Positions 1 to 49,318 of a stretch of DNA of 64,000 nt are shown here, in pieces (the stretch's first letter is position 1; each line of letters opens with the position of its first letter). A program made the position numbers and the translations under genes. Origin of the DNA: Octopus sinensis (lineage: Eukaryota); the NCBI RefSeq assembly GCF_006345805.1, contig NC_042999.1:23808001-23872000 (forward strand). Direction: 5' to 3'. The notes below the pieces were generated by a model that searched no databases, had not been told where the DNA came from, and saw only the letters and a list, made by a program, of their open reading frames with translations.

Positions 1-3000
1 CAGTGAAACCAGGCTCTCCGACCCGCAGGAACTCGCAGCCCTTTTCGGCGGATACGAGATATTTCTATCTCCGTGTCGGCCGGGAGCGGGCGGTGGTGGT
101 ACTGCGGTGTTGTTTCGGAAGGGCCTGGACTTGAAAATAAGGACAGTCTTCTTGGATCCGGAAGGTAAGTTGGTGGTCCTCGACGTGGACGGTAGTGACG
201 GCGGTGCTTTCAGACTGCTGGCTGCCTACGTTCCGACAGGAGCAGGGCAGTCGGATTATTTCAAACGTCTGGAAGTTTTCCTGGGAACGTCACGCACTCT
301 AGTGCTAGTTGGGGATTGGAACGCTGTCTTAGACGAACGTTTCGATCGGGTGGGCAGGGGAGCGTCTGATAGGAGAGGGGGAGGGTGCAAGAGCCTCGCC
401 AATCTACTCGGCCGCTTTCAGCTGTCCGACAGGTTTCGACTAGACAACCCGAATGTGCCAATGTGGACTTGGACCAACCGCATCGGGTCGTCTAGATCGT
501 ACTTAGATAGAGTGTTTTGTAGGCCAGCGGATAAGGACAGCGTAGGGTGTCCACAATTCCACCTAGTCGAATATACGGACCACAAATTAGTGATCTGTAC
601 GGTCGACTTAGATAGGCTACATAGACAGGGATCCGGCTACTGGAAGCTGAACGCGTCGTTAACGACGTGCAAAGCTTACAGAGACCGGATTAGTTTACTA
701 GTTAAGCGGGCGCTCACAGGGGCAATCATCAACAACAACTGGCGGTTTGCCCTCAAGAGAGCAATTAGAGTAGAGTCGATTAGGTATAGTAAGACTCTAG
801 CTATTGAACGTGGGAAGAGAGAGCGGGATTTAGTTAAGAAACTAGACGAGGCTCTCGACACTGGCATCGCGACCGACGTGTTGGCGGTAAGGTTGGCCCT
901 CGACCAACACTTCGACGCCAAACACGAAGGCTGCGTTGTCAGAGCTAAGGTACGTTCGCTAAGCGGGGAGGGGACTAGAGCCGCTCGATGGGCCCGCGTG
1001 GCGGAGGCGAAGCGAGGCAACAAAGCAACCATTCGGTCTTTGGTGGACCAGAACGAGCGCGAGGTTACCGAACCGAAGCAGATGTGTACGGTGCTTCAGC
1101 GGCACTTTGCTCAACTGTTTGGGACGAGCGGTGGAACGGACACCAACGGTACAGACATCGGTGTGTACCTGGACGGACTGCCGCAACTCTCGGACAGCGA
1201 GGCAGAGTGCTGCGAAGGACCGATATCTGCCTGGGAAGTGCAGGAAGCGATGAAGAGTTGTACGAGAGGTAGATCGCCGGGTTTGGATGGTCTGCCCTAC
1301 GAGCTTTACGTTTCAATGCCAGACTTGTTTGCGGGCCTGTTGGCAAACGTCTACTGCAACTGGCAGCAAAACGGGAGAATTCCTGCTTTTGTCTGTCGAG
1401 GGGTGGTGGCTTTTCTGAAGAAGGACACAAACAAGGGGGACGTTATAGGGAATTTCCGGCCCATCACTCTGCTCAATGCAGAGTTGAAGATTTTAGCCAA
1501 GGTGCTAGCCAAGAGATTGGTCGGCAAGACGCAGACATGCGCCGTGCCGACCAGGTCGATACACGACAACCTCCATCTCATGCGCTACATCATAGATAGG
1601 GTGGGTAACGACGCTGGCGCGGGTGGGGCTTTGATCAACTTGGATCAGAGTAAAGCCTTCGATAGAGTCGACCATCGGTACCTGGCAGCTGTCCTCAAGG
1701 CAGCCGGCTTCGGTCCAGTCTTCCGCGGGTGGATAGCTGCTTTATACAGCAACATCTGCTCGGTGATACGGGTGAACGGTCACCTTTCGGAACCGTTCGA
1801 CATCTCGCGTTCGGTCCGCCAAGGATGCCCTCTCTCCTCCCTCTTGTACATTTTGACTCTCGAGCCATTACTGCGCAAGTTGGAGGCTTTGAGGGGTATC
1901 CCGCGCGATCTAGGAGGCGGAAACAGCGTGTCTGCTTATGCCGACGACGTCACCGTGGTGGTGTCGAGCCACAGGCACATTGGCCTGATTGGCGAGACGC
2001 TAAACCAGTACGAAGCGGTGACAGGGGCAAAGATTAACGCGGAAAAGTCTGTGGGCTTGCAACTGGGCACCTGGAGAGGCAAGCCCATGCCGTCCAACAG
2101 CGTCGTAGGGCGCTGGACAGACGGACCCGTTAAACTGCTCGGGGTCTGGTTCGGTCCGGACCTCCAGGTGGATAAGAACTGGGAAGAGGTGACGAGCAGG
2201 GTGGCACGTCTCACCCAGAAATGGGCCGAGAGGAAGCTGTCCCTGAAAGGTCGAGCGGAGGTGGCGAATGCGTACATCGCATCCGTCATCTATTACCGCT
2301 TGACCGTCGTCCCTTGTCCCGACCGCTGGTTGGCCAAGCTGGTACGCCTGCTCTTCGACTTTTTGTGGAAGGGTCAGGTGCCACTGGTCAGGCGATCCAT
2401 CTGCTGTCAACGACCGCTGAACGGAGGCCTTGGAATGCCGTGGTTGCTGTTGCGCAGACATGCGCTCAGGCTGCGGCATCTCAAGCGCTTCCTAGACGGT
2501 GAACAGGTGTGGTCGTCTTTTGTCAGACGCGATTTTCCGCAGCTCGTCTCTTTGGCGGAGCTGCAGACCTGGATCAAACGTAGACCTAGAAAGGGCGCTT
2601 GGCACCTCGAGTGCCGTCAAGCCCTCTCCGCCCTCCGTCGGGCGGGCAATGCGATCGGTTACAGCTCCACTCTAGCGTTCTATAGAGGGTTAGTGGAGGA
2701 AAAATGCGACGACGTTCTCGGGGAAACTCTAGGCGTTGAAGATGACGAACCGTGCGGTCTGTTCGGGAGGACTTTCGGGCCGGGGCTCGCCTGGCAATGC
2801 TACCGGGCCGGTCGCTCGCCTGGCAGTGCTACCGAGGGGCTCTGCCTGTTCGAGATAAACTCTACTGGCACGGAAGTGCCGTCAGCCGGGCTTGCTCGAG
2901 GTGTTGCCAGGACGACGAAACCGTTCTGCACGCACTCGTCCAGTGCCCGAGTATTGCTGAAATATGGGTTTACGTCGAACAGCTAATGTCACGTGTAGGA

Positions 3001-3134
3001 CGGATCCGACTATCGGCCAAATCCATAGTGAAGATTGCCCCGCCGACCTCCTTTAACAAGGAGGGCGAGGCCGTTTTCTTGTGCCTAGTGGCTGTGGCGA
3101 AAGAGGTCGTGTGGTGGACTCGTTTGAAAGGGCT
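1..3134 (+). mobile_element. Tx1/L1-clade non-LTR retrotransposon ORF2 (APE endonuclease, reverse transcriptase, RT zinc finger); runs in from the left edge, 3' end missing
   Basis: The frame of ORF 107..2986 is open from base 2 (SETRLSDPQ...). APE motifs GDWN, SYLD and TDH; RT motifs PGLDG, FRPITLLN, DQSKAFD, QGCPLS and YADD. The C-terminal HALVQC zinc-finger region continues in the 2752..3336 frame. Confidence 0.93.
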
Positions 3135-3203
3135 AAATAATAATAATAATAATAATGATAATAATAATAATAATAATAATAATATAATAATAATAATAAT
3201 AAT

Positions 3204-3234
<31 letters not shown>

Positions 3235-3290
3235 TTAATAATGATAATAATACAAATAATAATGATAATAATAATAATGATAATAATACT
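3135..3290. repeat. (AAT)n microsatellite
   Basis: Direct reading of the sequence. Confidence 0.97.
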
Positions 3291-3862
3291 GATGCAGTAC
3301 CAGGCAGTGGCTCTCATGGCTTCTGATCTTAACTGATTGGAAGTGTTATCATGTACATTGTTTTGTCTTGGTATAAAAGATGGGCTACAGCAAATATTCT
3401 GCTCAATGCCACAGATTTGCTTGTCAGTTGTTTGACCGTAACCAGTTGACCATGTCCCTTAGTGGCTGACGATATGTGCATCTCTGATCACGAGCAGAAT
3501 TAGTGGGGGAGCATCATAGACATGTGTTGAGAGGGATTGTTTGGGGTTTGAATAGTTCACCTCTGGAAACATGGGTGGTTCTTTCAACATCCTTAAACAA
3601 CCCTTATTCAGGGACCGTTTGAGCGGGATGGGCTACTCAACCTGAAGAAAATTCTAACTGGGCCCCACCTGCAAGGTCATGTGCTGTTTATCTTGATATG
3701 AGATCACCATGTCGCGCACATATGATTGTGATGCATGTGCCTGGTGTACCTTTATCAGACGGGTAGTCATGATGGGTATATTGGGCTTCGTATATTTTAC
3801 CCCAGTGTCACTTTGATGGCATGAACTGCTCTCTCACTCAATAATAATAATAATAATAATAA
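3291..3862 (+). mobile_element. Probable 3' UTR fragment of a non-LTR retrotransposon, flanked by and ending in (AAT)n
   Basis: About 550 bp of mixed-base sequence between two (AAT)n tracts, with no ORF. The family assignment is inference only. Confidence 0.45.
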
Positions 3863-4321
3863 AAGAATAAGAATATCGATATGTCTTTATGTTATGTAAT
3901 ATGATTTAAAACAAGCCTTGAACGTGATTAAGTAAACTGGCAACAGATGCCATAAGGCGTGTACTTAATCATTGAGGTTCTAAAAATGCGTTAAAACAAC
4001 AGTTCACTTATTGAACGTTGTGTCAGAATGTTGATGATTATCTGTAAGAATTGAAATAAATATTGACAATGTTTTCAAACGTGATTTCAAACATTAAAAA
4101 GTAAACACCTGTCAGTATTAAGTTTATTTTCTTGTTTTCTTCTTTCTTCCTTTTTCTTTTATAGGAATCCAATAAAAGAAACGAAACACTGCAGCACACA
4201 TGCACACATGCACATACGCATGCACGAACATATATACTCATACACTTCCACACACAAACACACGTAAAACACACATATATATATAATCAATAATTATATA
4301 TGCATATATGCATATTCTTTT

Positions 4322-4497
4322 ACTCTTTTACTTGTTTCAGTCATTTGACTGCGGCCATGCTGGAGCACCACCTTTTAATCGAGCAACTCGACCCCGGGAC
4401 TTATTCTTTTGTAAGCCCAGTACTTATTCTATCGGTCTCTTTTGCCGAACCGCTAAGTAACGGGGACATAAACACTAGGGGACAAACACACACACGC

Positions 4498-4530
<33 letters not shown>

Positions 4531-4670
4531 TACGACGGGCTTCTTTCAGTTTCGGTCTTTCAAAATCCACTCACAAGGCTTTGGTCGGCCCGAGGCTATA
4601 GTAGGAGACACTTGCCCAAGGTGCCACGCAGTGGGACTGAACCCGGAACCATGTGGTTGGTAGACAAGCT
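4322..4670 (-). mobile_element. SINE family A (tRNA-like head, central microsatellite, LINE-like tail), 5'-truncated
   Basis: Matches many other copies in the window; tail GGCGGTGCTCCAGCATGGCCGCAGTCAAATGACTGAAAC followed by (AAGAGTAA)n. Confidence 0.88.
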
Positions 4671-4695
4671 AGACGTAAACATACATACATATATA

Positions 4696-4731
<36 letters not shown>

Positions 4732-5004
4732 TGTATGTATATATAAATCCACACGCGCACATATAATTCGATTGATGTATGAAGATACCAATTTCGGTGA
4801 TATAAAAAACAAACTTGTATGCACGTGCGAGCATGTTGGCTTGTATGCATATAGATATACACACATATCTACAAACATGCACACACACACACACACACAC
4901 ACACACCACACATACATAGAGATAAACACGTATAAAAATCAAGGCCATATACACGCTTATACAAATACATACACTTGCTTACATTCACACACGCACACAG
5001 GCAC

Positions 5005-5047
<43 letters not shown>

Positions 5048-5121
5048 TATATACATCCCTCTATATATAGATGTGAAGATATGAGGAACGTACATCATTT
5101 GCCGAGTATTCACAGAGCAAC

Positions 5122-5161
5122 ATGTTTAACGTAGGAGCATTCAAACTGCTTGCAATAATTG
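5122..5161 (+). CDS. Gene A exon 1, signal peptide start (MFNVGAFKLLAII)
   Basis: ATG at 5122, hydrophobic stretch, donor G|GTAAGA, ends in phase 1. Confidence 0.72.
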
Positions 5162-5274
5162 GTAAGATCAAATCTTCACTATTCAACAAAAGATCTTATT
5201 TTCATTGTAGATTTCTTACAAAGAACGCGTCTTTTGTTCTGTTCATTTCTAACATTCTGGTTTCTTTATTTCAG

Positions 5275-5313
5275 CTTTCCCTGCGATTATTCTGCCAGCC
5301 AGAGGAGGTGCCA
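5275..5313 (+). CDS. Gene A exon 2, end of signal peptide ((A)FPAIILPARGGA)
   Basis: Acceptor TTTATTTCAG, donor GTAAGT, 39 nt, phase 1 to phase 1. Confidence 0.72.
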
Positions 5314-5393
5314 GTAAGTATATACACATATATATATATAAACAACTTGATGATAATATAAGTTAAATTTTTAAAAAGCAAGTTTAATATCTA

Positions 5394-5849
5394 TTGGGTT
5401 GCCCGGAAAGTTCATGCCGATCTTTAAAGGAAAGAAAAAGGTCAATAAATTCTTGCCATTACATTTTTAATCAACCAAATATGAACCATTTTGTTGCACA
5501 ATTTTTCCTTTAACTTGAAAATACTTATTTCTTTACTACCCACAAGGGGTTAAACACAGAGGGGACAAACAAGGACACAGAAAGGTATTAAGTCAATTAA
5601 TGTGTTTAGTTGATACTTAATTTATCGACCCCGAAAGGATGAAAGGTAAAGTCGACCTCGGCGGAATTTGAACTCCGAACGTAACGGCGGACGAAATACT
5701 GCTAAGCATTTCGCTTGGCGTGCTAACGTTTCCGCAAGTTCGCCGCCTTATTAACTTGAAAATACCATCTTCTCAGAACTGAGGTGCCTGGGAGGGTAAG
5801 TCGAAAGGTAAGCTACTATAAATCGGCACGAACTTTCCGGACAACCCAA
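5394..5849. mobile_element. Tc1/mariner-type MITE
   Basis: 28-bp TIRs at 5394-5421 and 5822-5849 with 2 mismatches; TA on both flanks. Confidence 0.85.
5525..5750 (-). mobile_element. SINE family B nested in the MITE
   Basis: 15-bp TSD TTAACTTGAAAATAC at 5510-5524 and 5751-5765; B-box-like GAGTTCAAATTCC on the minus strand. Confidence 0.88.
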
Positions 5850-5894
5850 TATTTAATTTAGGGATATCAGAACATTATTCTACGAATAATATCA

Positions 5895-6272
5895 TAGATA
5901 CATGTCACTGGCACAAGAACTCGAGGACGACTTCATCTTCGTTTCAAGGAGGTCTGCGAGAGAGATATGAATTCGCTTTATCCGGACGTCCTGAGGTGGA
6001 TGGATGTAGCAAATAATGGCCGCCATTAGAGATATTGAAAAGGGGATGAATGAGGGGAAGAAAAACAGGAACTCACCACAAAAAAAAAGTACACCCGACG
6101 GAAGGTAAAACCAGTTGCGTCGGCAGAGAGCTCCTTCAAATGTAGTCGGTTCATGCGTGACAGCCACTCCTGTGTGGGCATTTAAAACCACAGCAGACGA
6201 AGTGCCGTTACCAGCTGCTGACACTATTTCTTCGGACGCAGATCCACGGACTCTCGAGACCACCGAATGTCT
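5895..6272 (+). mobile_element. RTE-clade LINE 3' fragment, degenerate
   Basis: Translates to GTRTRGRLHLRFKEVCERDM...FKCSRFMRDSHSCVG, resembling the RTE C-terminus. Confidence 0.65.
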
Positions 6273-6311
6273 ACGTGCATGCATACATACATACATACAT
6301 ACATACATACA

Positions 6312-6345
<34 letters not shown>

Positions 6346-7210
6346 CATACATGTATACATATATACATAGATACATACATACATAGATACATAATACATA
6401 CATATATACATACATACATACTATATACATAGATATATACATACATACATACACACATGCATACATAGATATATACATACATATATAATTATATACATGT
6501 ATACATATATACATAGATACATACATACATACATACAAACATACATACAACATACATACATACATACATACATACATACATACATAGATATATACATACA
6601 TATATACATACATGTATACATATATACATAGATACATACATACATACATACATGCATGCATACATATATATATAGATACATACATATACACATGCATACA
6701 TAGATATATACATACATATATATATATATATATACATGTATACATATATACATAGATACATACATACATATATAGATACATACATGCATACATATATACA
6801 TACATACATACATACATACATACGTACATACATGCATACGTACGTACATGCATACATACATACATACATAAATACATACATACATGCATACGTACTTACA
6901 TACATAAATACATACATACATGAATACATAAATACATACATACATATATACAAACATACATATATACATACATACACACATACATACATACATACATACA
7001 TATATACATACATACATACATACATACATACATGCATACGTACGTACATGCACACATACATACATACATACATACATACATAAATACATACATACATATA
7101 TATAAACATACATATATACATACATACACATATATACATACATATATACATACATATATACATACATATATACATACACACACATACATACATACATGCA
7201 TACGTACATG
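6273..7210. repeat. Complex (CATA)n satellite-like microsatellite block; a further block lies at about 7645-7950
   Basis: Direct reading; source of the YIHT/MYVC junk ORFs. Confidence 0.97.
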
Positions 7211-7336
7211 CAAAAGAGACCGATGGAATAAGTACTTGGCTTACAAAGAATAAGTCCCGGGTCGAGCTGCTTGACTAAAGGCGGTGTTCCAGCATGGCGC
7301 AGTCAAATGACTGAAACAAGTAAAAGAGTAAAAGAG
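7211..7336 (+). mobile_element. SINE family A, 3' part
   Basis: Tail sequence matches other copies. Confidence 0.8.
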
Positions 7337-7346
7337 AAAGAGTTAC

Positions 7347-7471
7347 CTGTAATCCAGCGAATCTGGCTTTCGCCGACATGCAAGCATGTAAGCAGTACTC
7401 AATAGAACGTGAACTAGCAACCATGCGCATGGCTGGAGAATGATATGAATCCTTAAAGCAACCAACATAAC
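7347..7471 (-). CDS. Gene A exon 3, N-terminal half of the WSC domain, on the opposite strand
   Basis: Minus strand reads TTATTTCAG|GT-YVGCFKDSYHSPAMRMVASSRSIEYCLHACMSAKARFAGLQ|GTAACT; 125 nt, phase 1 to phase 0. Confidence 0.85.
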
Positions 7472-7843
7472 CTGAAATAAAGAAATAACGAACAGTTTTA
7501 ACAATATTTTCTAAATAATATCTACTCTATTTCTGTTGCGCTTATTGTATTTAACATTCTAAGTATAGAACACAATTGAATATGAAATCCATTATATTTG
7601 TATATGTAAATACCTAAATATTGTACGTTTACAAGTAGGGTAGTACATACATACATACATACATACATACATACATACATACATACATACATGCATACAT
7701 TCATACATATATACATGCATACATACATGCATACATACATACATACACGCATACAAAGATACATGCATACATGCATGCATGCATACATACATTCATACAT
7801 ACATACATATATACATGCATACATACATACATACATACATACA

Positions 7844-7877
<34 letters not shown>

Positions 7878-7949
7878 CATACATGCATTCATACATACAT
7901 GCATACATATATACATGCATACATACATACATAAATACATACATACATA

Positions 7950-8840
7950 TATTTCTAAGTATTACAGCCGATTAAAGAAAATTTGGACCTTAGAACTCTC
8001 TCCATTCAATAAAACAGTGACCCACAATGTGTTTGCAGTGCCAGTTCTCTTACCAGCATTTGAGCGCTTGATGAGATCCGAGCTATTTATGTGAAAACTC
8101 GAAAAATACTAACATGCACACATAATTTCCACATAAACAGTGACGTAAACTGCTTCTGCCTAAAACGAAAACAAGGTGGCAGAGGTTTAAAATCGATCCA
8201 AAATGTCGCAACATTTTTTAACCACCAAGCATCGAAGTGCATCTTTTGACCAAGTTTGCATACATGGGGCTGATAACATTATAAGACGTGGAAAGCAGCT
8301 CTTTGAGCAACACTCTTTGTCTGATAACCTGGAATACATGCCCAAAGAAATCGTACAACTCTACCGCAACTTATCATCAGATGAATACATGAGCCTATAT
8401 GAGCGGAAGACTACGCATGGATATGTTACTAGAAATCTCCGTGATGATAGTAACATCGATCATCAAAGCAGTTTATCATGGACGAGTAGCCGGATTACTA
8501 CTTCCCAGGATGTACAAAAGGGATAGAGACGCAGGAAAAGCCGTAAAATGTGACAACCGATGCAGCCTTTGTGGAGTTCACAGTGAAGATATCACCCACA
8601 TCATAAGCAGTTGTCCGTCATGTCATCACGGAATTATCTACCGATGAGACATGACGCTGTGGCTAGGACACTCAATAATGAAATCCGTCGGAAGGGTTAT
8701 CCCGAGGACAAAGAAATAAGAACCCACAATATGGTTGAAGCCATAGCCACTCATAATGAAAAGGAATACTGGTGGAATGTCCCAGTGAAGACCTCAATAA
8801 AGTGTAAGCACAACAGACCTGATATAATGATTTGGAATTT
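7950..8840 (+). mobile_element. R4/Dong-type non-LTR retrotransposon fragment (end of RT, CCHC knuckle, restriction-like endonuclease), frameshifted
   Basis: YYSRLKKIW, GGRGL, CSLCG..EDITHIISSC, RHDAVA and NRPDI motifs spread over ORFs 7771-8919. Confidence 0.8.
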
Positions 8841-8986
8841 CAACATCAACAAGAGGGATTTTCTGCAAGGATTGTCTCATCAAAATTTAATATATCAAAC
8901 CAGTGTATATCTTGGATAAATATCCCTATAAGTGTTTTGAATATTCTCATTGTGACTATATGTACATTCACACATACCTACATATA

Positions 8987-9019
<33 letters not shown>

Positions 9020-9066
9020 CACTCATACATACAAATATATATATATATATAGATATACATATATAG

Positions 9067-9161
<95 letters not shown>

Positions 9162-9237
9162 CATACATATATCACCGTGACCGACCAGGCTATCAGATGT
9201 TGCTACAGAATGCACTTCGCATTGCTTTAGCCTTTTT

Positions 9238-9955
9238 CTTTACCGATTACATTAGGGATAATTTCAAATGTCTTAGCTCTGGTGCGCTAAAAATTCCGGA
9301 AGCGAAGAACTGCTGTAAATAATTTACTGCGGTTAGTGCTGCCTATTAGAGAACATATTTATTTTAATATTTAAAAAATGAGGGAGATAAAGTAATATTA
9401 ATTTAATTAACACCAATTTAAAACCAGTAGCCTAGCATACAAAAGTCTGAAAAATCAGAGAAAATTCTAATACATGTGTATATTCAAAGGGCAAGACCGC
9501 TAGGTAGTCGGCCGTATGCTAGAAATAGATCACCAACGATCAAACTACAAAGAATATTCTCTAGAGGAAAATTCAGCAGACACCAGAACAATTAGGCAGG
9601 CAAGACATATGATAATTATATAAAAAAACATAATTACTCACGACCGGCGGTTTCAACTATTAACAAAAGAATTACTTATATAATCCAATTGTCCGTAGTT
9701 TCGTCAGTATGATCGTTCCGACAGGTAATGTAATTTGAAAAACTAACCCCAGCTTTCTGTGCCAAAACAGACACGTGTTTAGTTTTACCGATTACATTAG
9801 GGATAATTTCAAATGTCTTAGCTCTGGTGCGCTAAAAATTCCGGAAGCAAAGAGCTGCAGTAAATAATTTACTGCGGTTAGTGCTGCCTATTAGAGAACA
9901 TATTTATTTTAATATTTAAAAATTAAGGAAATAAATTAATATTAATTTATCTCCC
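9238..9955 (-). mobile_element. Tandem Penelope-type terminal repeats (about 170-bp direct repeat, 545 bp apart)
   Basis: 9238-9410 is similar to 9783-9955; a hammerhead-like motif lies between them; a Penelope ORF lies about 1 kb to the right. Confidence 0.6.
9638..9712 (-). ncRNA. Type I hammerhead-like motif with a bulged helix I
   Basis: Minus strand: TCAT-a-CTGACGA-AACTA...TAGTT-GAAAC-cgccg-GTC-GTGA. Confidence 0.5.
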
Positions 9956-9966
9956 GCATTTTTTAA

Positions 9967-10002
<36 letters not shown>

Positions 10003-10062
10003 ATGCATGCATACATACATACATGCATGCATGCATACATACATGCATACATACATACATAA

Positions 10063-10108
<46 letters not shown>

Positions 10109-10625
10109 AAAAAATGAAGTTCGAAAATGCTGCTGTATTATACAATTTTTAATTTTTATATATACATTATAACATGTTTCAGTTCCTGAAATGAACCTTA
10201 TCAAAAAAGTTATATATAAAAAAAGACAGCTCATGCCGTCAAACACAAGAAATTCATTATAATACACAACGGAGTCAGACATCTTAGAGTTCATGTATAG
10301 TTGATATATAGTTCATGTATAGTTGATATATAGTTTGAAGTATATGTCAAAGTGTTCGATGCAGTGGCCCACGGTGGCGATACGTATTCAATACAAAAAA
10401 CAGATCAAAGTGGTGGAAAGCGGTCAATACAGAAGATTGATGTTTCCGACAGAGCGAGGAATTCATTTTTACCTTAAGCAAATGTGGTGACCCATGGTGG
10501 ATGTTCGCTGGGTGGTTCTAATGAGTTTTTTGTGAAGTGCTCGGTTTTATAATGCCTGTTAGGTGGTCAATCCAGCGTAGCGTGACGTCATCAACGTTTT
10601 GACCAATCGTTTCGTTAGGTGGCTT

Positions 10626-10820
10626 TAGTCAAGTAGAACGGGACGTCATCATTATTTTGACCAATCGCTGCATTATAACTGCCTCTTGTTTGTTTCCTGT
10701 TTTGACCAGTCGCTTCGTTAGTCAAGTAGAACGGGACGTCATCATTATTTTGACCAATCGCTGCATTATAACTGCCTCTTGTTTGTTTCCTGTTTTGACC
10801 AGTCGCTTCGTTAGTCAAGC
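10626..10820. repeat. 93-bp tandem repeat (two units plus a partial unit)
   Basis: TAGTCAAG recurs at 10626, 10719 and 10812 with identical units. Confidence 0.92.
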
Positions 10821-10968
10821 GTCATGCAGATTCTGCCCAATCACGACTTATAGCTACATTAGATCTGCCCCCTGTCTGTACTTGTTAGGTGACTATTCAA
10901 GCAGAAAAGGACGTCATCAATTTTGACAATGACTGTCCCCTGTTTGTATCCTGTCCATTCTAGCTGAG

Positions 10969-12170
10969 CTAGACGTCATCAACTGTTGACCAATCAGAAT
11001 CGGGTCTGACCCTTAGCTGTATCGTATGTATCAGGGTCAGATTTGCACGAAAGAATTTTTCTCCTTTTTTACTTAGGCATATTTCCGTCAGAGTGAGTGT
11101 CTGTTTGAAGTAGCGGCCGTGGTGGATGGAATTTTGCTTCTCCTTTTCGGAGGACTTATCTTTTGTTTTAGTATTCCTGGCCAGGGTGTTTAAACTTGGT
11201 CTAAATTTTTTTATGAAATATAGTTCTTTATTTTGGCGTTGTGTGAAGGTTGCGTTGTCACTGAATTTATAGAGCGGGTTAGTTGTAAATTTCGGATTTA
11301 CATTTCCAGCACATCTATCTATGTGTCCGCTGACCGGTATTTTGCGGTAATCAGGGTTTCTAATTTGTGAGTTATGCACCGCCATCCGTTACGTAAGCTA
11401 TTTTTTGTATGGCCTATATACTGCCTATTGCAGCCTGCGCATGTTATGACGTAAATTAAGTTTTCTGATGCGCAGGTGAAGTTTGTTCTAATGGTGAACT
11501 GGTGGCCTTGTTCCAGTATAATTCTGATCCTTCTTTCAAGATGACACAGATTCCGCAGTTGGGCCTTCCACATTTTCTAACTGCTGGTTTTGTGGTTGAT
11601 GTTGAGTGCAGTGTAGCTTGGGTTAAAATCCTTTTCAAGGATTTTGGTTGCCGTTTACTTTTAATGATGGTGTGGTTTCGAGGATCCGGTTCATCTTTGG
11701 GTCTCCCTTTAGTAGGGCTGTGCTTTGTAGTATGGTGTTGAAGGCCTCATTGTTGAGTGGGTTGTGTGTAGAGATGTAGGGAAGGGTTTTTAATTGTTCT
11801 TCTTTTTTGGTTTTGTTTGTCTCAGGTCTTCTATACTTAATTTAAGTACCCGTTGGATTGCACTGTCTATTAGGGGCTGTGGATAGTTTCTATTTGTGAG
11901 TGTGGTTCTAAGTTCCTGGAGACGTGTGTGTCGGGTGTTTGTGTCTGATATTATGGTGCAAATCCTTCTAGCTAAACAAAAAGGGACATTCATTCTAGTG
12001 TGCGTGGGTGGCATGAATCAAAGGGTAGGTACTATTTAGAGTCTGTCGGTTTATAGTAGATATCTGTCTCTATTTTGTTGCCGGGTTCTTAATGAGGATG
12101 TCTAAAAATGGTAATTCTTTTTCGTTGTGGTCCATCGTGAATTGTATATTGTCATTTATTCCATTTAATA
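10969..12170 (-). mobile_element. Penelope-like element fragment (RT thumb and GIY-YIG endonuclease), 5'-truncated and frameshifted
   Basis: NVPFCLARRICTII and NYPQPLIDSAIQR; FTCASENLIYVITCAGCNRQYIGHT (GIY-YIG). Confidence 0.85.
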
Positions 12171-12180
12171 GTATTTATAC

Positions 12181-12213
<33 letters not shown>

Positions 12214-12237
12214 TAATATATATATATTATATATATA

Positions 12238-12278
<41 letters not shown>

Positions 12279-12399
12279 TATATATACATGTAAGTTTTTT
12301 CAGTTTCAATAACTTTCTTTGTGTTTGTGTTTGCCCTTTTGGCTAATTAACAGATTAGAATTTATTTGATGTAATTATCTATTTTATTTATGCATTCAG

Positions 12400-12526
12400 A
12401 ATGGTGGAAAAATATGTTCTTGTGGCAAAAGATATAACAAATATGGTCCAGCCCATAATTGTAATATGAAATGCAAGTCAGGGCAGACGTGTGGCGGTAT
12501 CTTGGCAAACAGTGTTTTCACAGTTG
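12400..12526 (+). CDS. Gene A exon 4, C-terminal half of the WSC domain
   Basis: TTCAG|[43 protein letters not shown]|GTTAGT; phase 0 to phase 1. Confidence 0.85.
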
Positions 12527-13649
12527 GTTAGTTAATGTTTATTCATTTTTCGATTATGTTTTTAAAAGCTTATATGTAATTATTACAAGGTTTTAATCGG
12601 CTAAATAGTTACACATTAATATGAAATTAACAGGATTCTTAATGAAACTAGCAGGTTATAATTAATTACACTTATTGAAATTGCTACATTCAAAATTACA
12701 TGCCACATCAGAAAAATTACAAGGCTACATCAGAAAAAACTAAAAGGGTGAGTAAATCTATCCTCATAGGAACTTCGTTTTAAATTTCCCACGGAACCAA
12801 ATTTACACTCCAAGTCTTTCGAATGATTCCTTCATAAGTGCGTTAGATATTACACGAAAATAACCCAGCAAAACACTCTTGAAGATATTTACTCATTCTT
12901 GCAACTGGGAGGCCCTTACTCAGTATCGCAACTTTAGCAAGACCATCATTCGAATCGCGAAGTGTGACTGGGTGCATAAACTACAAAGTACCAGATCTCG
13001 CACCTTACAATTTATAGCCAATCCTTTTTGTCCTTTGCTTGAAGAATATCTATCACGTTTGCGAGTTCCCCAATTCTTCTAATTCATAACAATGATGGTT
13101 CCGTAAGTAGCACTCCTCGGCACAAAAATTTTCTCGGTGGCTAATTTTGGATAAAATTTTATGCTTTACTTTTCGTTGTTATAGCAAATTATTATATGAA
13201 AAATCCAATAAAGTTTCTTACTCAGAGGGATGAAAACAAAGAAAATAAATATATACAGAGATAAACAATAAGTACAACGATAAATAGAACTTTCGTTAAA
13301 TGATACTCTATCGTTATACCCTTATAAATATATAAAACACTGTGGAATAAGGCTCATATTTATTTTATACACTAGTCAATCCATGCCATAGGAGACCCCT
13401 CTCTCTAATATACATGTATATATACACATACTCGCATTAACTGAATTTCCCGTCGTTGCCGGGTAATTTTCGCAATTGAGTGACTTGGCGGACTTCAGAA
13501 TTGTACACCGAAACAGGTTGGATTTTCTCAATTGCGACGGTTAATCTTCAGTTTTTCTTCCTTAGACCCTTTCAAATGACGATTTGGGGAACTTTTCATT
13601 GGAAGAAAATGTTTGAAAATTTATTAATCTCGGCTCCCAGCCTCGACAC

Positions 13650-14290
13650 TGAGACCTCGACATCTCTGGCACTTCATAGACGACGGTGAACAGGTGTGGA
13701 CGCCTTTTGTGCGACGCGCTTTCCCACAGCTCGTCTCCTTGGCCGAACTACAATCGTGGATCAAACAGAGACCGAGGCTAGGCGAATGGCACTGCGAGTG
13801 TCATGTTGCTCTCAAGCAACTCTGCCGTCCGGGACCAAATTTGTGCGACTTCATTAGAACAAAGGCGTTTTATAGAGGATTAGTGGAGGGGAGGTGCGAC
13901 GACGTTCTCGGGCAGAATCTGGGCGTCGACGAGAGACACCTGACTCGCCTGTTCAAGATAACTTTCGGGCCTGGACCTATGGACAATCACCAAAGATCCC
14001 TGGCCTGGTAGTGCACATCGAGAAGCATTACCTGTTCAGGATAAGCTCTACAGGCACGGTTCGAGACACACTGGACCTACTTGCCCGAGATGCTGTCGGA
14101 GCGACGAAACCGTTCTGCACGCTTTCGTGCAGTGTCGATCCATTTCGGACCTGTGGGCTTATACCGAACGGCTGCTGTCATGTGTGGGACAAGTCCGCCT
14201 GTCGGCCGTATCTATCGTGAGAATTGCACCAGGAAGACAAGGCAGTTTTCATCGTACTGGGACCACTGTTCTCATTGTTATTGCTCCGAT
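13650..14290 (+). mobile_element. Degenerate Tx1-family ORF2 3' fragment, same family as 1-3134
   Basis: WTPFVRRAFPQLVSLAELQSWIK aligns to WSSFVRRDFPQLVSLAELQTWIK of the 959-aa ORF; has stops and frameshifts. Confidence 0.88.
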
Positions 14291-14718
14291 TCGGTCGCCA
14301 ATAATTTGTATTTAGTTTAGAAGGCAGTAAAAATAGGGTGGGAGTGGGGACCAAATTTGGCGGCCCTGAAAAAATTATAGATCCCCTTGGGACATTCATT
14401 GGGATTAGGGGAGCTGCTGGTTTTAATTTCGTTGACCTTTCATCATACTGTTATTTTCTGCTTCTGAAAAGGATGAAAATGAATCTTGTAAAATTATGTA
14501 AAATATATTCATTTCATAATTTTACAAAATATTTAGTTCGTAATTTTACAAGACTCTCATTTTCATCCATTTCAGGTGCAGAAAATAGTAGTATGATGAT
14601 GTTTTTAACGAGACTCATTGTAACTTCATTCACGTTACCAACGTACTGATGTGGATCTAATCGACTGGAACCACTCCCTCAAAATTTCGTGCATTGTATC
14701 TAGACGAGAAAAGTATAC

Positions 14719-14788
<70 letters not shown>

Positions 14789-14888
14789 TACTAATAATGA
14801 TATTAGGGAGTATAACTTCAAACTTATAGGGACAAATTCATTTTAATATTAAATCAAATTTCACAGTATAAATATATAAAATATGAAT

Positions 14889-15070
14889 TAGAGATAAAAC
14901 CACTATTATGCAACTCAAACAGTAATAATATTTATCATTCATTTTATACCTTTTGAGATCTAGTTATAAGTTATATATTTAAACAAAAATTATATATATA
15001 TATATTGGTTATTTATGTATTGGTTTATGTCTATTACTGTTTGAGTTGCATAATAGTGGTTTTATCTCTA
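14889..15070. repeat. Perfect 39-bp inverted repeat in a Penelope-type terminal-repeat fragment
   Basis: 14889-14927 is the exact reverse complement of 15032-15070; the same family occurs at about 52100-52300 and about 39070. Confidence 0.85.
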
Positions 15071-15416: not shown

Positions 15417-15659
15417 TTAACGCATCTTGATTATGGTGGCGATGATGATGATGATGATGATGATGATGATAATGATAAAATTAATTTCTCTTGCTACAAA
15501 TCAGGAAGAATACGGGAGAAAATTATTAAGAAAGTAAAGAGAAATCGAGGAAATAAATAAAAGGATTAGACGGGAAATTCAAAATGCGAATTCTATTATA
15601 TTCCATTGTAAATAAAGATGTGATTGTGAAATACAACTTCGTTTTCTTTTATACTCTAG

Positions 15660-15770
15660 CCGTTCCATGCCATTCGAGACCTTGTAAGAACGGTGGCAAA
15701 TGTACCATAATAAAAGGTAGATACTCCTGTAAATGCAGACCTGGTTACTTTGGAGGCGCCTGTACTAGAT
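15660..15770 (+). CDS. Gene A EGF exon
   Basis: (A)VPCHSRPCKNGGKCTIIKGRYSCKCRPGYFGGACTR; 111 nt, phase 1 to phase 1, AG and GTAAGT splice sites. Confidence 0.92.
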
Positions 15771-15974
15771 GTAAGTATAACATAAAAAATAGCCATAATT
15801 TATAGGCATAGATTTATCATAGATTTTGTTTCACAAGTATATTTAAAGCTAACGTAGGTTCCTCATGAATAGATATTGAGAAAGGCGCGATTGGTTGAAT
15901 GGCTTGTTTAAGGGAAATATGGCTTGGTTAGGAACTTAAAAGAATGTTTGCATGTTATTTCACAAAATTCCCCC

Positions 15975-16065
<91 letters not shown>

Positions 16066-16070
16066 CTACA

Positions 16071-16116
<46 letters not shown>

Positions 16117-16260
16117 TTAACTGAGTATCTCGTCGTTGCCGGGTAATATTCACAATAGTGTGCCTTGGCGAACTTTCGGAATAGTATATCCATGCTATAA
16201 ACCAGGGAGAATACTGGAGAAAATGATTGAAAAATTAAAGAGAATTTCATAATGGGAATT

Positions 16261-18501
16261 CAGAAGTGGCTGTGTGGTAAGTAGCTTGCTCACCTCATTG
16301 CGCATGTGCGATTCAGAGTTGTATTTAACACTGAAGTGATAAAGATGTGTTTTTGAAGCCGTCTTAAATTGAAGATTTTTGAAACTCAGCTGTAAGGTAA
16401 GACTTTTTTGGCGGGTTCAGTGGGGGGCCTGTTATTCGCCGCAAATATTTTTTACAAACAAGAAGTCCTCACTGGATTCTAGTCTGCCGGCAGCTGAGTG
16501 AATATTTTTTCACTTAATTGTAAAAATTATTATTTTGGTGGGCGTATCCTGCCTCAAAATTTTGCTTGAAAATTATGTTTGTCCAGAAATAACTCTGTGG
16601 GAATTTCAACAATATTGGAGTACATATGAGAAGAAAATTGGAATGATTTTTCAGCAATTAACTGTTTAACAATTGCGTTAAATGTTTGGCCGGGAGTACC
16701 GTGTGGTCCAAAGTTTTGTTGTGTTCTGAACTGTTTCTCTCTCTTCATCTTTTATTTAAAAAAAAACTCTTTATTGAACTGTTAATTTTTTTCTCCTTCC
16801 TTTTGTTTGGACTTTTTTCTCGTCTTTTTCCTTAATTATTTTGTATTTTAAGAACTGTGTTTTTGAACTTTTTTTAAAAACATGGCAAAGAACAATTAAA
16901 AGTTGGTAGAGTGGGAAATTACACCACCCAAAAGATGGTTAAAAGAACTTGAAAGTAAGACGGTTGTTTTGAGAACCTACTCTAGGACCCTCGACACCAT
17001 TGCCGTTTTCAAAAAATATATATATAATCGAAAGAGAACTGGCAGAATTTAAGCCGGCGATTAAGTTTATCTCTCGGGGGGGATGGGTCAAATATGTAAC
17101 CGTGTGGTTGCTGTTTGACTCCCTAGAAGTGGCTTGTGAATTTGCGAGCCAGCCCCAGGAGGGCAATTAAATTTTTTCTTCCCACTTATTGTGGGAAGAA
17201 GTTGACGAGGGCTAGGGTTTGCAGCTTGCCACCCGGAGTTGGGCCCATGTGGATAGGAGATACTATCCGCCAGGGTCTGGGTGGCAGTAGCACAAAGCTC
17301 CTCAACGTGAATATTCTGCCTGCGGTTGACTGGGAGGGGTCAAAACAGCCTTTGACCCTATGGACCCAGTCAGCCGACAGTCTGGTATTTCCAAACTTTT
17401 TGAGAATGGCCGGCTCTAGATATTCGATGATTCTTGAGGGACGCCCCTCCCTCCAAGTTTCGTCGGTGCCTGGATCCTGGCCATATAAAAAAGAACTGTC
17501 CTCAAGGGCAAAGCAAAGTCCTGGAATGCTTGACGGAGACCTCTGTAGAGGAGAGAATGAAGGTGACCGAGGAGACGGAGGACTCGTCAAAGAAGAGCCG
17601 CAAAAGGAAGAAGGTGAGCAATAATGGGTGCTCACCGAAGGGTCCTGGGGATGAGGGAGGGGAGGCGAATCTCCCGGTCACGGAGGAGACGCACCCTCCC
17701 TCAGTTGAGAAGAAAAAAGAGGAAGGCAATCAGAGATAGGGCACCGGAGTGTCCCGGAGTCACGTCGGTGGGATTGCGCCACCGGCGGGAGTGGGGAGAC
17801 ACTATTGGCGGGAATACCTTTGGCCTTCACACGGGAGTCCGAATGGTCACAGATAGCTGTGGAGGTTATAGCGTTGATCGTGTTATATTGGGACTAAAAG
17901 AGGAATATCGCTTGTGGCCGGGTGATGCCGACTCGGATCCCGCCTTAGTTTTAAATGAAGCGTGGCTGATGGTGGAGTACACGGGCACATGCGATGATGA
18001 GGTGGAAAATTGACAAGAGGTTAAAATGTCTCAGTGTTATAATGTGTAAGAGGCTTAGCGCCTCATTTGTAAATGGACTTATTAAGTCAAATAATTGTAA
18101 AAACGGAGGTAAGTGGTTCAATATCTCGGTTTGTTTTTGTGTCTAAATGGCAGTAAGAGGTTCAATACCTCGTTTTGTTTCTTGCGAAAAAAAAAAAATA
18201 ATAATGTTTTAGAGAAGCGAAAATTGGCAGGCGTTTTTATCTTCTCCCATTAATATCATTTTATTTCACCATTCATATCATCCATGTCTCTGTCCAGCCC
18301 GCAAGCTACTCTGTATCATGCCTTTAAGGCAATATTTTTTGCAATAAAGTAGCTTGCTTACCAACCACATGGTTCCGAGTTCAGTCCCACTGCGTGACAC
18401 CTTGGGCAAGTGTCTACTAATATAGCCTCGTGCCGACCAAAGCCTTGTGAGTGGATTTGGCGGACGGAAACTGAAAGAAGCCCGTCGTATATATGTATAG
18501 T

Positions 18502-18568
<67 letters not shown>

Positions 18569-18800
18569 GCGTGTGTGTGTGAGTATGTGTTTGTGTGTCT
18601 GTGTTTATCCCCCCAACATCACTTAACAACCGATGCTGGTGTGTTTACGTCTCCGTAACTTAGCGGTTCGGCAAAATAGACCGATAGAATAAGTACTAGG
18701 CTTACAAAGAATAAGTCCTGGGGTCGATTTGTTCGACTAAAGGCGGTGCTCCAGTATGGCCGTAGTCAAATGACTGAAACAAGTAAAAGAGTAAAAGAGT
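16261..18800 (+). mobile_element. SINE family A split by the Tx1-like insertion (16261-16290 plus 18347-18800)
   Basis: The head AGTGGCTGTGTGGTAAGTAGCTTGCT resumes as TACCAACCACATGG after the insert. Confidence 0.85.
16291..18346 (+). mobile_element. ORF1-only Tx1-like element (degenerate gag-like ORF1, no ORF2) inserted into a SINE head
   Basis: Knuckle remnant CLDPGHIKKNC and LEGRP; 12-bp TSD AAGTAGCTTGCT at 16279-16290 and 18347-18358; ends GCAATA. Confidence 0.72.
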
Positions 18801-18857
18801 ATATTCCGTTGTAAATAAAGATGTGATTGTGAAATAAAACTTCTATTTCTTCTATAC

Positions 18858-18954
18858 TCGAGACCATGTAAGAACGGCCGTACATGTTTCAGTAAAGGAG
18901 ATACATTCATCTGTAAATGCAGACCTGGATACACTGGAAGCTACTGTAATACAT
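18858..18954 (+). pseudogene. Duplicated EGF pseudo-exon; acceptor and first Cys deleted
   Basis: SRPCKNGRTCFSKGDTFICKCRPGYTGSYCNT|GTAAGT. Flanks match 15590-15925, but the 19 nt TAGCCGTTCCATGCCATTC are missing. Confidence 0.85.
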
Positions 18955-19222
18955 GTAAGTATAACATAAAATATAGCCATAATTCATAGGCATAGATTTA
19001 TCATAGATTTTGTTCTACAAGTATATTTAAAGAGCCAAGGTAGGTTCCTCATGAATAGATATTGAGAAATGCGCGATTGGTTGAATGGCTTGTTTAAGGG
19101 AAATATTTCGGGTTAAACTTTGCATATAATTCCAGTCGATCCTCTCTCTTTCTCTCTTTACACACACACACAGACACACACACACACGCACATGCGCACA
19201 TACATATATATATCTGTGTGTG

Positions 19223-19274
19223 CACTGGCTACTATTAAGAACGGATCGAATAATACCTACTTTTCTGTTGAAGT
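19223..19274 (+). pseudogene. Orphan 52-nt copy of the middle of the downstream VWD exon
   Basis: Encodes [17 protein letters not shown]; matches 19701-19753 except at the lesion and one base. Confidence 0.88.
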
Positions 19275-19607: not shown

Positions 19608-19856
19608 CTTCGGACCCTTGTATATGTAAAGTGTATGGTGACCCTCACTATGGAACGTTCGATGGACAAATGATACATTTCATGGGCACATGTAAATATA
19701 CACTGGCTACTATTAAGAACTATTAAGAAGAATACCTCCTTTTCTGTTGAAGTAAAGAACGAACACCGAGGGAATAACCGTGTATCTTACACACGTTTAG
19801 TGGATGTCAAACTCACTGGTTTCACAATTCGTCTGTTGCCAGCTAACAAGATCTTG
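19608..19856 (+). pseudogene. Gene A VWD exon 1, disrupted
   Basis: SDPCICKVYGDPHYGTFDGQMIHFMGTCKYTLATIKN, then TAA at 19724-19726 and a +1 shift, then [20 protein letters not shown]...ANKIL|GTACGT. Confidence 0.88.
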
Positions 19857-20812: not shown

Positions 20813-20843
<31 letters not shown>

Positions 20844-21602: not shown

Positions 21603-21670
21603 GTAATGATTATTTTCTTTCTCAAACTCCAAAATCAAAAATAAATATTATGTAAATTGTTGATAGTATA

Positions 21671-23149: not shown

Positions 23150-23180
<31 letters not shown>

Positions 23181-24262: not shown

Positions 24263-24530
24263 ATGCAAAGTGAATGATGTTAATTCGACTTGTTCAAAGG
24301 AGCAGACAAAAGAATGTGATTTAATGAATGACAAATCTTTGAAGCCTGCATTGAAAAGATCGGAGCTTCGCATCTAGAAGAATACTTGGAGTCTTGTAGA
24401 ATCGATGTCTGTAGTTATCACAATGATCCTACGAACCACCACTCTGTTTTCTGTCGAATCATTGAAGGTTTTGCTACAGAATGCGAAAGTGTGGGAATTT
24501 TCGTTAATTGGAGAGAAATATCACAATGCC
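24263..24530 (+). pseudogene. Gene A C8-domain exon with a -1 frameshift at about 24338
   Basis: CKVNDVNSTCSKEQTKECDLMNDKS / EACIEKIG...SCRIDVCS...CRIIEGFATECESVGIFVNWREISQC; 268 nt, one short of a phase-consistent length. Confidence 0.88.
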
Positions 24531-25467: not shown

Positions 25468-25659
25468 CGATGAAATGCAAGGAAAAGGAAGAGTTCCAAT
25501 ACAAGACTAGCAGCTGTCAACCTTCGTGCGCTGATAGATCACCAAATTGCACAGGTTCCAGTCAAGGTGTGTGTTTGTAGACAAGGCTTTATTCTGAGTG
25601 GTGAACAGTGTGTACCTGAAACAGAATGCGGCTGTATCGACAACAAGATATATATGAAG
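25468..25659 (+). pseudogene. Gene A TIL exon with a +1 frameshift at about 25570
   Basis: MKCKEKEEFQYKTSSCQPSCADRSPNCTGSSQG / CVCRQGFILSGEQCVPETECGC; 192 nt versus 191 nt in the intact paralog; TAG at 25578-25580. Confidence 0.88.

Positions 25660-49280: not shown

Positions 49281-49318
<38 letters not shown>

What the first reader, a model, noticed from the sequence alone, without database searches (positions are those of the whole stretch)
7347..7471. An essential exon lies on the opposite strand with intact splice sites and the exact phases needed
Seen: + strand exons 5122-5161 and 5275-5313 encode a signal peptide and end in phase 1, and + strand exon 12400-12526 starts in phase 0 with the second half of a WSC domain. 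I found no first half on the + strand between them. The minus strand at 7471-7347 holds it, with a polypyrimidine acceptor, a GT donor, phase 1 to 0 and no lesions. Joined, the exons read ...ARGGA-S-YVGCFKD...[14 protein letters not shown]..., one complete WSC domain. Three explanations are possible (inference): a locally inverted contig, a real inversion that helped kill gene A, or trans-splicing from an antisense transcript. Established: antisense trans-splicing is known for Drosophila mod(mdg4). The exon sits between long (CATA)n and (TA)n tracts, which favours the first two; I could not locate breakpoints.
Basis: partly seen in the sequence, partly recalled or inferred. Interest (0 to 1): 0.8.

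Follow-up and report, generated by a model that had tools for sequence, protein, structure and literature searches.

The report
Flipped exon in octopus mucin-like gene
One exon coding half of a WSC domain really does lie backwards in the Octopus sinensis reference genome, but it sits in a decaying copy of a duplicated zonadhesin-like gene, so it is most likely an ordinary small inversion (or an assembly error), not exotic splicing.

Summary
Exons 5122-5161(+), 5275-5313(+), 7471-7347(-) and 12400-12526(+) join into a signal peptide plus one complete WSC domain. It scores 38.5 bits against Pfam WSC (cut-off 27.8) and has 8 Cys. A family profile finds exactly one first half (minus strand) and one second half (plus strand) in about 111 kb.

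The window is Octopus sinensis GCA_006345805.1, CM016861.1:23808001-23872000.

Context lowers the interest:
- The signal-peptide exons belong to a clustered zonadhesin-like family (EGF/VWD/C8/TIL).
- In a head-to-head paralog, the annotated mRNA joins those exons straight to the VWD exon. WSC is therefore an optional phase 1-1 module.
- The downstream unit in this window carries three frameshifts and a damaged EGF exon.
- No protein in the 15-billion-protein collection uses these WSC exons.
- The nearest relative is O. bimaculoides XP_014776971.1 (108 aa, 49% identical), a collinear model.

A scaffold-level orientation error is excluded, because all four exons lie in one gap-free contig. A real small inversion (about 0.55) and an intra-contig assembly error (about 0.3) cannot be separated without reads. 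Trans-splicing would need two events and has no support (about 0.02). Breakpoints were not found.

The parts
5048..5069 (+). TATA-like boxes about 55-75 nt upstream of the ATG; putative promoter of the gene
   Evidence: Pattern match at 5048 and 5062. The same sequence precedes the annotated paralog P0154 in L001. Promoter function is inferred.
5122..5161 (+). Exon 1: start codon and first part of the signal peptide (MFNVGAFKLLAII)
   Evidence: The paralogous exon is the annotated first coding exon of P0154, zonadhesin-like.
5275..5313 (+). Exon 2: rest of the signal peptide (AFPAIILPARGGA); ends in phase 1, donor CCA|gtaagt
   Evidence: In P0154 the paralogous exon is spliced straight to the VWD exon.
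6278..7209 (.). Imperfect (CATA)n tract, 932 bp, reads CATA on the + strand
   Evidence: TRF; motif counts show no TATG.
7210..7340 (+). 5'-truncated tail (131 nt) of the common octopus SINE. It ends 6 nt from the donor of the inverted exon and has no target-site duplication
   Evidence: Nine other copies all continue upstream of GCAAAAGAG. No orphan 5' part was found in window 3000-15000.
7347..7471 (-). Inverted exon 3: first half of the WSC domain (S)YVGCFKD...FAGLQ; phase 1 to 0; donor gtaact at 7346-7341
7472..7643 (-). Single-copy intron flank upstream of exon 3 (minus-strand sense), with a polypyrimidine tract and AG
   Evidence: It matches nothing else in the window.
7644..7949 (.). 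Second (CATA)n tract, 306 bp, same orientation as the first
   Evidence: It is no closer to any part of the left tract than generic microsatellite similarity.
12400..12531 (+). Exon 4: second half of the WSC domain (NGGKICSCG...NSVFTV). There is a possible phase-1 donor G|gttagt at 12526/12527. Read through, it gives GGT TAG, a stop at 12529-12531
   Evidence: O. bimaculoides XP_014776971.1 ends at the same point...KIG-stop.
15660..15770 (+). EGF exon a, 111 nt, phase 1-1; in frame with the donors of both exon 2 and exon 4
18858..18965 (+). EGF exon b: tandem duplicate of exon a that has lost about 15 nt, including its acceptor and first Cys
19608..19856 (+). VWD exon of unit A. It is frameshifted at 19720-19730, where 11 nt copied from the preceding bases replace 10 nt
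24264..24529 (+). C8 exon of unit A, frameshifted at about 24335 (A4 to A3)
25470..25659 (+). TIL exon of unit A, frameshifted at about 25569 (extra base in a GT run). The annotated start of P0151 (25654) lies just after it

Best explanation
A small balanced inversion, between about 0.16 kb and 7 kb long, flipped the first-half WSC exon with its splice signals inside the 7.1-kb interval between exon 2 and exon 4. The gene is the 5' part of one member of a clustered, fast-evolving zonadhesin-like family: signal peptide - WSC - EGF - VWD - C8 - TIL.

The plus-strand pre-mRNA can no longer include that exon. Two outcomes follow.
- Joining exon 2 (phase 1) to exon 4 (phase 0) shifts the frame and stops after 12 codons ([12 protein letters not shown]-stop).
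- Skipping to a phase-1 acceptor (EGF or VWD) keeps the frame but loses the WSC domain, as the paralog's annotated mRNA does.

This copy is degenerating anyway. The inversion is one lesion among several and is recent enough that the four small exons are still intact.

Shown: the orientation in the assembly, the complementarity of the halves, the gene-family context and the downstream lesions.
Inferred: that the orientation is true of the animal's DNA, and the consequences for splicing.
For: - Exactly one first half (-) and one second half (+) exist, lying in gene order between exons 2 and 4 with matching phases. This argues for an in-place flip of one gene's exon.
- The four exons lie in one gap-free contig; the only gap is 29 kb further on.
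- The island is single-copy, so it is not the inverted duplication that a missed-adapter read would produce.
- The window is O. sinensis CM016861.1:23808001-23872000, a PacBio plus Hi-C assembly (and my own memory of Li et al. 2020).
- Unit A downstream has three frameshifts against its paralogs. One is a complex 11-for-10-nt replacement that is not a typical read error. There is also an EGF exon without an acceptor.
- The annotated protein P0151 starts only after the last frameshift.
- The exhaustive protein search found no product using these WSC exons; the best identity is 50%, to O. bimaculoides XP_014776971.1.
- The region has a history of rearrangement: a head-to-head paralogous copy about 62 kb away (L001) lacks the WSC and EGF exons.
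Against: - No breakpoints, flanking inverted repeats or microhomology were found.
- Both flanking (CATA)n tracts read the same way and contain no flipped part. An inversion confined to the 430-bp island would therefore need both breaks exactly at the tract edges.
- All four small exons, their splice sites, the start codon and the TATA box are intact.
- Two of the three downstream frameshifts are in short runs and could be consensus errors.
- No independent sequence of this locus could be obtained.
Confidence: 0.55

Rival explanations
1. Intra-contig assembly error. The 430-bp unique island between two long low-complexity (CATA)n tracts was laid down in the wrong orientation during long-read assembly or consensus, and the real gene is collinear and intact.
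For: - The island is bounded on both sides exactly by microsatellite tracts of the same orientation, with no flipped tract sequence.
- All WSC-gene exons, splice sites, the promoter and the stop are intact.
- The related O. bimaculoides model XP_014776971.1 is collinear.
- The local consensus may be imperfect. The adjacent SINE tail has two private one-base homopolymer deletions, and two downstream frameshifts sit in short runs.
Against: - There is no gap or contig join within 34 kb.
- Reads of several kb fix the orientation of a 430-bp segment, so a clean single-copy flip is not a usual long-read error. This point is inference.
- The island occurs once, not as an inverted duplicate.
- NCBI annotated no WSC product here, although that would also follow from the error itself.
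Confidence: 0.3
2. Relic of an inverted duplicate. The minus-strand exon comes from a second, oppositely oriented family copy that was later mostly deleted, while the plus-strand first half of this copy was lost independently.
For: The cluster does contain oppositely oriented paralogous copies (L001 is head-to-head with the window's gene).
Against: - This needs at least three events where one inversion suffices.
- No other minus-strand family exon exists in the window, and there is no plus-strand remnant of the first half.
- The exon sits exactly in gene order between exons 2 and 4.
Confidence: 0.08
3. Functional rescue by trans-splicing. An antisense transcript carries the exon and is spliced twice in trans into the plus-strand mRNA, possibly helped by pairing between the (CAUA)n of the sense RNA and the (UAUG)n of the antisense RNA.
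For: - The exon, its splice sites and its phases are intact.
- The direct repeats flanking the inverted block recall the eri-6/7 arrangement.
Against: - The exon is internal, so two trans events are needed. I know of no precedent for that.
- No promoter or transcript evidence exists.
- No protein containing these exons is in the collection.
- The downstream unit is broken.
- Even in eri-6/7, with one event, efficiency is a median 10%.
Confidence: 0.02
4. The exon belongs to a separate minus-strand gene and only by chance complements the plus-strand half.
For: None beyond its orientation.
Against: - There is no minus-strand second half or signal-peptide exon anywhere in the window.
- The two halves overlap the profile as 2-43 and 38-85 and together give a canonical 8-Cys domain.
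Confidence: 0.02

Closest known systems
Octopus bimaculoides XP_014776971.1, 'WSC domain-containing protein 2-like' (P0040)
   Same: - Same signal peptide (FKLLAIIAFP.IIL).
- A single WSC domain and the same C-terminal end (...[IV]G-stop).
- 49% identity over 109 residues.
   Different: - It is a collinear predicted mRNA in another species.
- At 49% identity it is probably a paralog rather than the ortholog.
- Its genomic locus could not be fetched.
Caenorhabditis elegans eri-6/7 (polymorphic inversion of the eri-6 exons, rescued by trans-splicing; PMC11414722)
   Same: - An exon block of one gene lies on the opposite strand.
- The block is flanked by direct repeats: about 930 bp there; 932 and 306 bp of (CATA)n here.
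   Different: - There the block is the 5' end of the gene with its own promoter, so one trans event suffices. Here the exon is internal.
- There the fused mRNA and collinear alleles are documented. Here neither is known.
- Here the repeats are microsatellite, not unique sequence.
Drosophila mod(mdg4) antisense trans-splicing (from my own knowledge)
   Same: Exons of one coding sequence lie on both strands of a locus.
   Different: - mod(mdg4) joins common 5' exons to alternative 3'-terminal modules that are independently transcribed.
- It is conserved and abundantly expressed.
- Here a single internal half-domain exon is involved, in a copy with other lesions.
Ordinary gene disruption by a small inversion in a decaying tandem duplicate (for example zonadhesin / IgGFc-binding-protein-like D-domain arrays)
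   Same: - A clustered family with intact and broken copies, frameshifts, lost exons and oppositely oriented duplicates.
- Phase 1-1 modules that can be dropped without breaking the frame.
   Different: Nothing essential. Only the neatness of the flipped exon, with no other lesion in the four 5' exons, stands out.

Membership tests
WSC domain (Pfam PF01822) | Full-length match to the family profile above the curated cut-off | tested here: met
   The joined exons score 38.5 bits against 27.8, over profile 1-82 of 82. The two halves cover profile 2-43 and 38-85.
WSC domain (Pfam PF01822) | Eight conserved cysteines | tested here: met
   Counted in the joined sequence: 3 from the minus-strand exon and 5 from exon 4. 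That eight is the family number is from my own knowledge.
WSC domain (Pfam PF01822) | Encoded so that one transcript can contain the whole domain | tested here: not met
   In this assembly the first half is on the minus strand and the second half on the plus strand.
mod(mdg4)-type antisense trans-splicing | Exons of one coding sequence lie on opposite strands | tested here: met
   This is at DNA level and in this assembly only.
mod(mdg4)-type antisense trans-splicing | The trans-spliced part is an independently transcribed 3'-terminal module, so one trans event suffices | tested here: not met
   The inverted exon is internal, with exon 2 upstream and exon 4 downstream on the other strand. Two events would be required.
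mod(mdg4)-type antisense trans-splicing | Mature mRNA carrying the junctions | not testable with these tools
   No RNA reads are available. No protein with these exons is in the collection.
eri-6/7-type inversion with repeat-assisted trans-splicing | Direct repeats flank the inverted exon block | tested here: met
   (CATA)n tracts at 6278-7209 and 7644-7949 have the same orientation. They are low-complexity sequence, unlike the unique repeats of eri-6/7.
eri-6/7-type inversion with repeat-assisted trans-splicing | Collinear allele or ortholog exists | tested here: inconclusive
   Only a 49%-identical collinear model from O. bimaculoides is known. No ortholog or second individual could be read.
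eri-6/7-type inversion with repeat-assisted trans-splicing | The inverted block is the 5' end of the gene with its own promoter | tested here: not met
   The start codon, signal-peptide exons and TATA box are on the plus strand upstream.
Degenerating duplicate (pseudogene) in a tandem family | Disabling lesions in other exons of the same unit, with intact paralogs nearby | tested here: met
   There are three frameshifts and an EGF exon without an acceptor in unit A. Unit B is open in the same exons. Two of the frameshifts could be consensus errors.
Degenerating duplicate (pseudogene) in a tandem family | No annotated protein product from the affected exons | tested here: met
   The exhaustive search of cluster representatives gives no hit above 50% identity. 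No protein-coding gene is listed for window 15654-25653.

The most novel reading that the evidence does not exclude
The inversion is real and polymorphic or lineage-specific, and the WSC-bearing mRNA is still made. An antisense transcript of the island pairs through its (UAUG)n flanks with the (CAUA)n of the sense pre-mRNA, and the exon is spliced in twice in trans. This would be an eri-6/7-like rescue, but of an internal exon.
Probability: 0.02. Interest if true: 0.85.

Novelty: new member of a known kind. Interest (0 to 1): 0.25.

Why it matters
If real, this is a clean example of how a mosaic extracellular gene loses a domain. One flip of a half-domain exon disables a phase 1-1 module while leaving the rest of the reading frame usable.

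If it is an artefact, it marks a local error in the O. sinensis reference, which has also served as the annotation scaffold for O. vulgaris work.

Either way, the test is cheap: spanning reads and junction reads. The small chance of an eri-6/7-like rescue in a mollusc is the only part that would interest a wider audience.

Tried and rejected
- **Word-index protein search with the joined product**: nothing. It missed P0040, which the exhaustive search then found.
- **Genomic locus of P0040:** not on record.
- **Look-ups of three ORFs of the island, hoping for independent contigs:** none on record.
- **Exact-match scan of metagenome contigs for the exon:** nothing.
- **Search for breakpoints:**
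  - Inverted-repeat search gave only microsatellite pairs.
  - An orphan 5' half of the truncated SINE was not found.
  - The paralog locus L001 has no homolog of the island or of the WSC exons.
  - The right (CATA)n tract is not a specific copy of part of the left one.
- **Pfam scan of the transposon fragments in the intron:** no usable hits.
- **Retrotransposed or transduced exon copy:** considered and rejected. An insertion exactly into the gap left by the missing exon of the same gene is too great a coincidence.
- **Mis-oriented contig in a scaffold:** considered and rejected, because there is no gap.
- **Missed-adapter palindrome artefact:** considered and rejected, because the island is single-copy.
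- **Original O. sinensis assembly paper:** not in the library.

Full report
**1. The observation**

- Exon 1 (5122-5161) and exon 2 (5275-5313) encode MFNVGAFKLLAIIAFPAIILPARGGA and end in phase 1.
- On the minus strand, 7471-7347 is a 125-nt open exon. It is preceded by ttcgttatttctttatttcag and followed by gtaact, and runs from phase 1 to phase 0.
- Exon 12400-12526 starts in phase 0.

Joined, they give a signal peptide and one canonical 8-Cys WSC domain.
- The Pfam WSC match is 38.5 bits against a cut-off of 27.8, over the whole profile.
- The Kremen-1 WSC domain is the closest solved structure.

I built a profile from 390 WSC domains and ran it with all filters off against every six-frame piece of the window and of two related loci. 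It gave two hits only:
- 7278-7526(-), covering profile positions 2-43 (E 2.5e-11)
- 12370-12528(+), covering positions 38-85 (E 7e-16)
- the next best hit had E 1.8

So there is exactly one first half, on the wrong strand, and one second half. No decayed plus-strand first half exists. This is not chance.

**2. Where the window comes from**

The zonadhesin-like protein P0151 and its locus L002 match window 15654-64000 at 100%. The window is therefore Octopus sinensis GCA_006345805.1, CM016861.1:23808001-23872000. That assembly has 20,491 contigs in 13,516 scaffolds. From memory, it is PacBio plus Hi-C.

The only N run is 41482-41581. All four exons therefore lie inside one contig, and a contig mis-oriented during scaffolding cannot be the explanation.

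**3. What gene this is**

Downstream on the plus strand lie these exons:
- an EGF exon (15660-15770, phase 1-1)
- a damaged duplicate of it (18858-18965)
- VWD exons (19608-19856 and 21304-21597)
- C8 (24264-24529) and TIL (25470-25659)
- a second, open unit of the same kind at 46.7-59.7 kb

A paralogous locus lies head-to-head about 62 kb away (L001). It has the same promoter and signal-peptide exons. Its annotated protein P0154 begins MFNVGTLKLLAIIAFPAIILPARGGA|TLKPCICKV..., so exon 2 is spliced in phase 1 straight to the VWD exon. That locus has no WSC or EGF exons.

The signal-peptide exons therefore belong to a zonadhesin-like family built of phase 1-1 modules. The two WSC exons (1 to 0, then 0 to 1) form one such module.

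The nearest relative of the joined product in 1.84 billion cluster representatives is O. bimaculoides XP_014776971.1.
- It is 108 aa long and called 'WSC domain-containing protein 2-like'.
- It has the same signal peptide and one WSC domain.
- It ends ...KIG-stop, just where the window reads ...TVG then TAG (12529-12531).

So the order signal peptide, first half, second half is the normal collinear one. Exon 4 may be either a terminal coding exon (a 111-aa secreted protein) or an internal exon using the weak donor G|gttagt. I could not decide between these two.

**4. State of this copy**

Against the paralogs, unit A has three frameshifts:
- an 11-for-10-nt replacement at 19720-19730 that copies the preceding bases
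- A4 to A3 at about 24335
- an extra base in a GT run at about 25569

The second EGF exon has also lost its acceptor and first Cys. The annotated P0151 starts at 25654, just after the last frameshift. No protein-coding gene is listed for 15654-25653. No protein in the collection exceeds 50% identity to the WSC product. The first frameshift is not a typical consensus error; the other two could be.

**5. Anatomy around the exon**

The exon sits in a 430-bp island (7210-7643).
- 7210-7340 is a 5'-truncated SINE tail on the plus strand, ending 6 nt from the exon's donor. Nine other copies all extend further 5'. There is no target-site duplication and no orphan 5' half nearby.
- 7341-7643 is single-copy.

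The island is flanked by (CATA)n tracts of 932 and 306 bp. Both read CATA on the plus strand and contain no TATG. The rest of the 7.1-kb interval is transposon debris, judged by inspection; Pfam was unhelpful. I found no breakpoints.

**6. Consequence (inferred)**

The plus-strand transcript cannot contain the exon.
- Exon 2 joined to exon 4 reads ...[15 protein letters not shown]-stop.
- Exon 2 joined to the EGF or VWD exon stays in frame without WSC, as in P0154.

**7. Which explanation**

An in-place flip of one exon is the simplest account of one minus-strand half lying in gene order between its partners.

Several points favour a real flip (about 0.55):
- the stretch is gap-free
- the island is single-copy
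- long reads normally fix the orientation of a 430-bp segment
- the locus is decaying and rearrangement-prone

Other points favour an intra-contig error (about 0.3):
- the island is bounded exactly by microsatellite
- no tract sequence is flipped
- all four exons are intact
- there are hints of imperfect local consensus

Only reads or another genome can decide between these two.

The remaining readings are weaker.
- A relic of an inverted duplicate needs more events (about 0.08).
- A separate minus-strand gene has no other exon (about 0.02).
- Trans-splicing would need two trans events on an internal exon, in a copy that is otherwise broken and yields no known product (about 0.02).

**8. Comparison with known cases**

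mod(mdg4) joins 3'-terminal modules with one trans event, and that defining feature is not met here.

The closer formal parallel is C. elegans eri-6/7. There a polymorphic inversion of the 5' exons is flanked by about 930-bp direct repeats that assist trans-splicing, at a median efficiency of 10% (PMC11414722). Here direct repeats also flank the flipped block, but they are microsatellite, the exon is internal, and no RNA evidence exists.

**9. Verdict**

The most likely meaning is ordinary: a small inversion, or a local assembly error, in a degenerating member of a duplicated gene family. Interest is low to moderate, and the test is cheap.

Noticed in passing
window 15660-25659 (+): Unit A of the zonadhesin-like array has three frameshifts against its paralogs. 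They are an 11-for-10-nt replacement at 19720-19730, A4 to A3 at about 24335, and an extra base in a GT run at about 25569. The last two could be consensus errors. An earlier count gave 24355 for the second; 24335 is correct.
   Followed up: yes
window 15600-15800 and 18800-19000: A tandem duplication of about 3.2 kb carries the EGF exon. The second copy lost about 15 nt, including its acceptor and the first cysteine.
   Followed up: partly
window 25654 onward; L002 10001-52236: The annotated zonadhesin-like protein P0151 (656 aa, no signal peptide) starts inside the TIL exon of the upstream unit, just after its last frameshift. It then continues into the next unit. The two units may be one long multi-D-domain gene whose model is truncated.
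   Followed up: partly
L001 (CM016861.1:23727947-23760850, reversed): This is a head-to-head paralogous copy about 62 kb upstream, with the same promoter and signal-peptide exons but no WSC or EGF exons. Its annotated protein P0154 ends in about 40 residues of out-of-frame C8 exon, so that copy looks degenerate too. L001 also holds a second tandem VWD/C8/TIL unit.
   Followed up: partly
window 41482-42583: The only assembly gap (100 N) is followed directly by a copy of about 1 kb, 82% identical to window 25983-26916, the sequence after unit A's TIL exon. Part of a further unit may be missing in the gap.
   Followed up: no
window 5387-5850: A MITE-like element has terminal inverted repeats of about 29 nt (attgggttgcccggaaagttcatgccgat / atcggcacgaactttccggacaacccaat). 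It encloses a different SINE-like insert. It lies in the intron just after exon 2 and is also present in L001.
   Followed up: no
window 107-2986 (+) and 22139-22888 (+): There is a LINE ORF of 959 aa (endonuclease plus reverse transcriptase, open). There is also a mariner-type transposase fragment of 249 aa inside an intron of unit A.
   Followed up: partly
window 49190-49440 (+): A long (TGC)n(AGC)n tract directly follows the VWD exon of unit B. It stays open in frame as runs of Cys and Ser.
   Followed up: no
window 7210-7340: The SINE tail beside the inverted exon has two private one-base homopolymer deletions (GGGG to GGG, CC to C) that nine other copies lack. They are either age or unpolished consensus.
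   Followed up: partly
tool behaviour: The word-index protein search returned nothing for the joined product, although P0040 shares a 10-residue word with it. The exhaustive search did find P0040. Absence in the word-index search is therefore weak evidence.
   Followed up: yes
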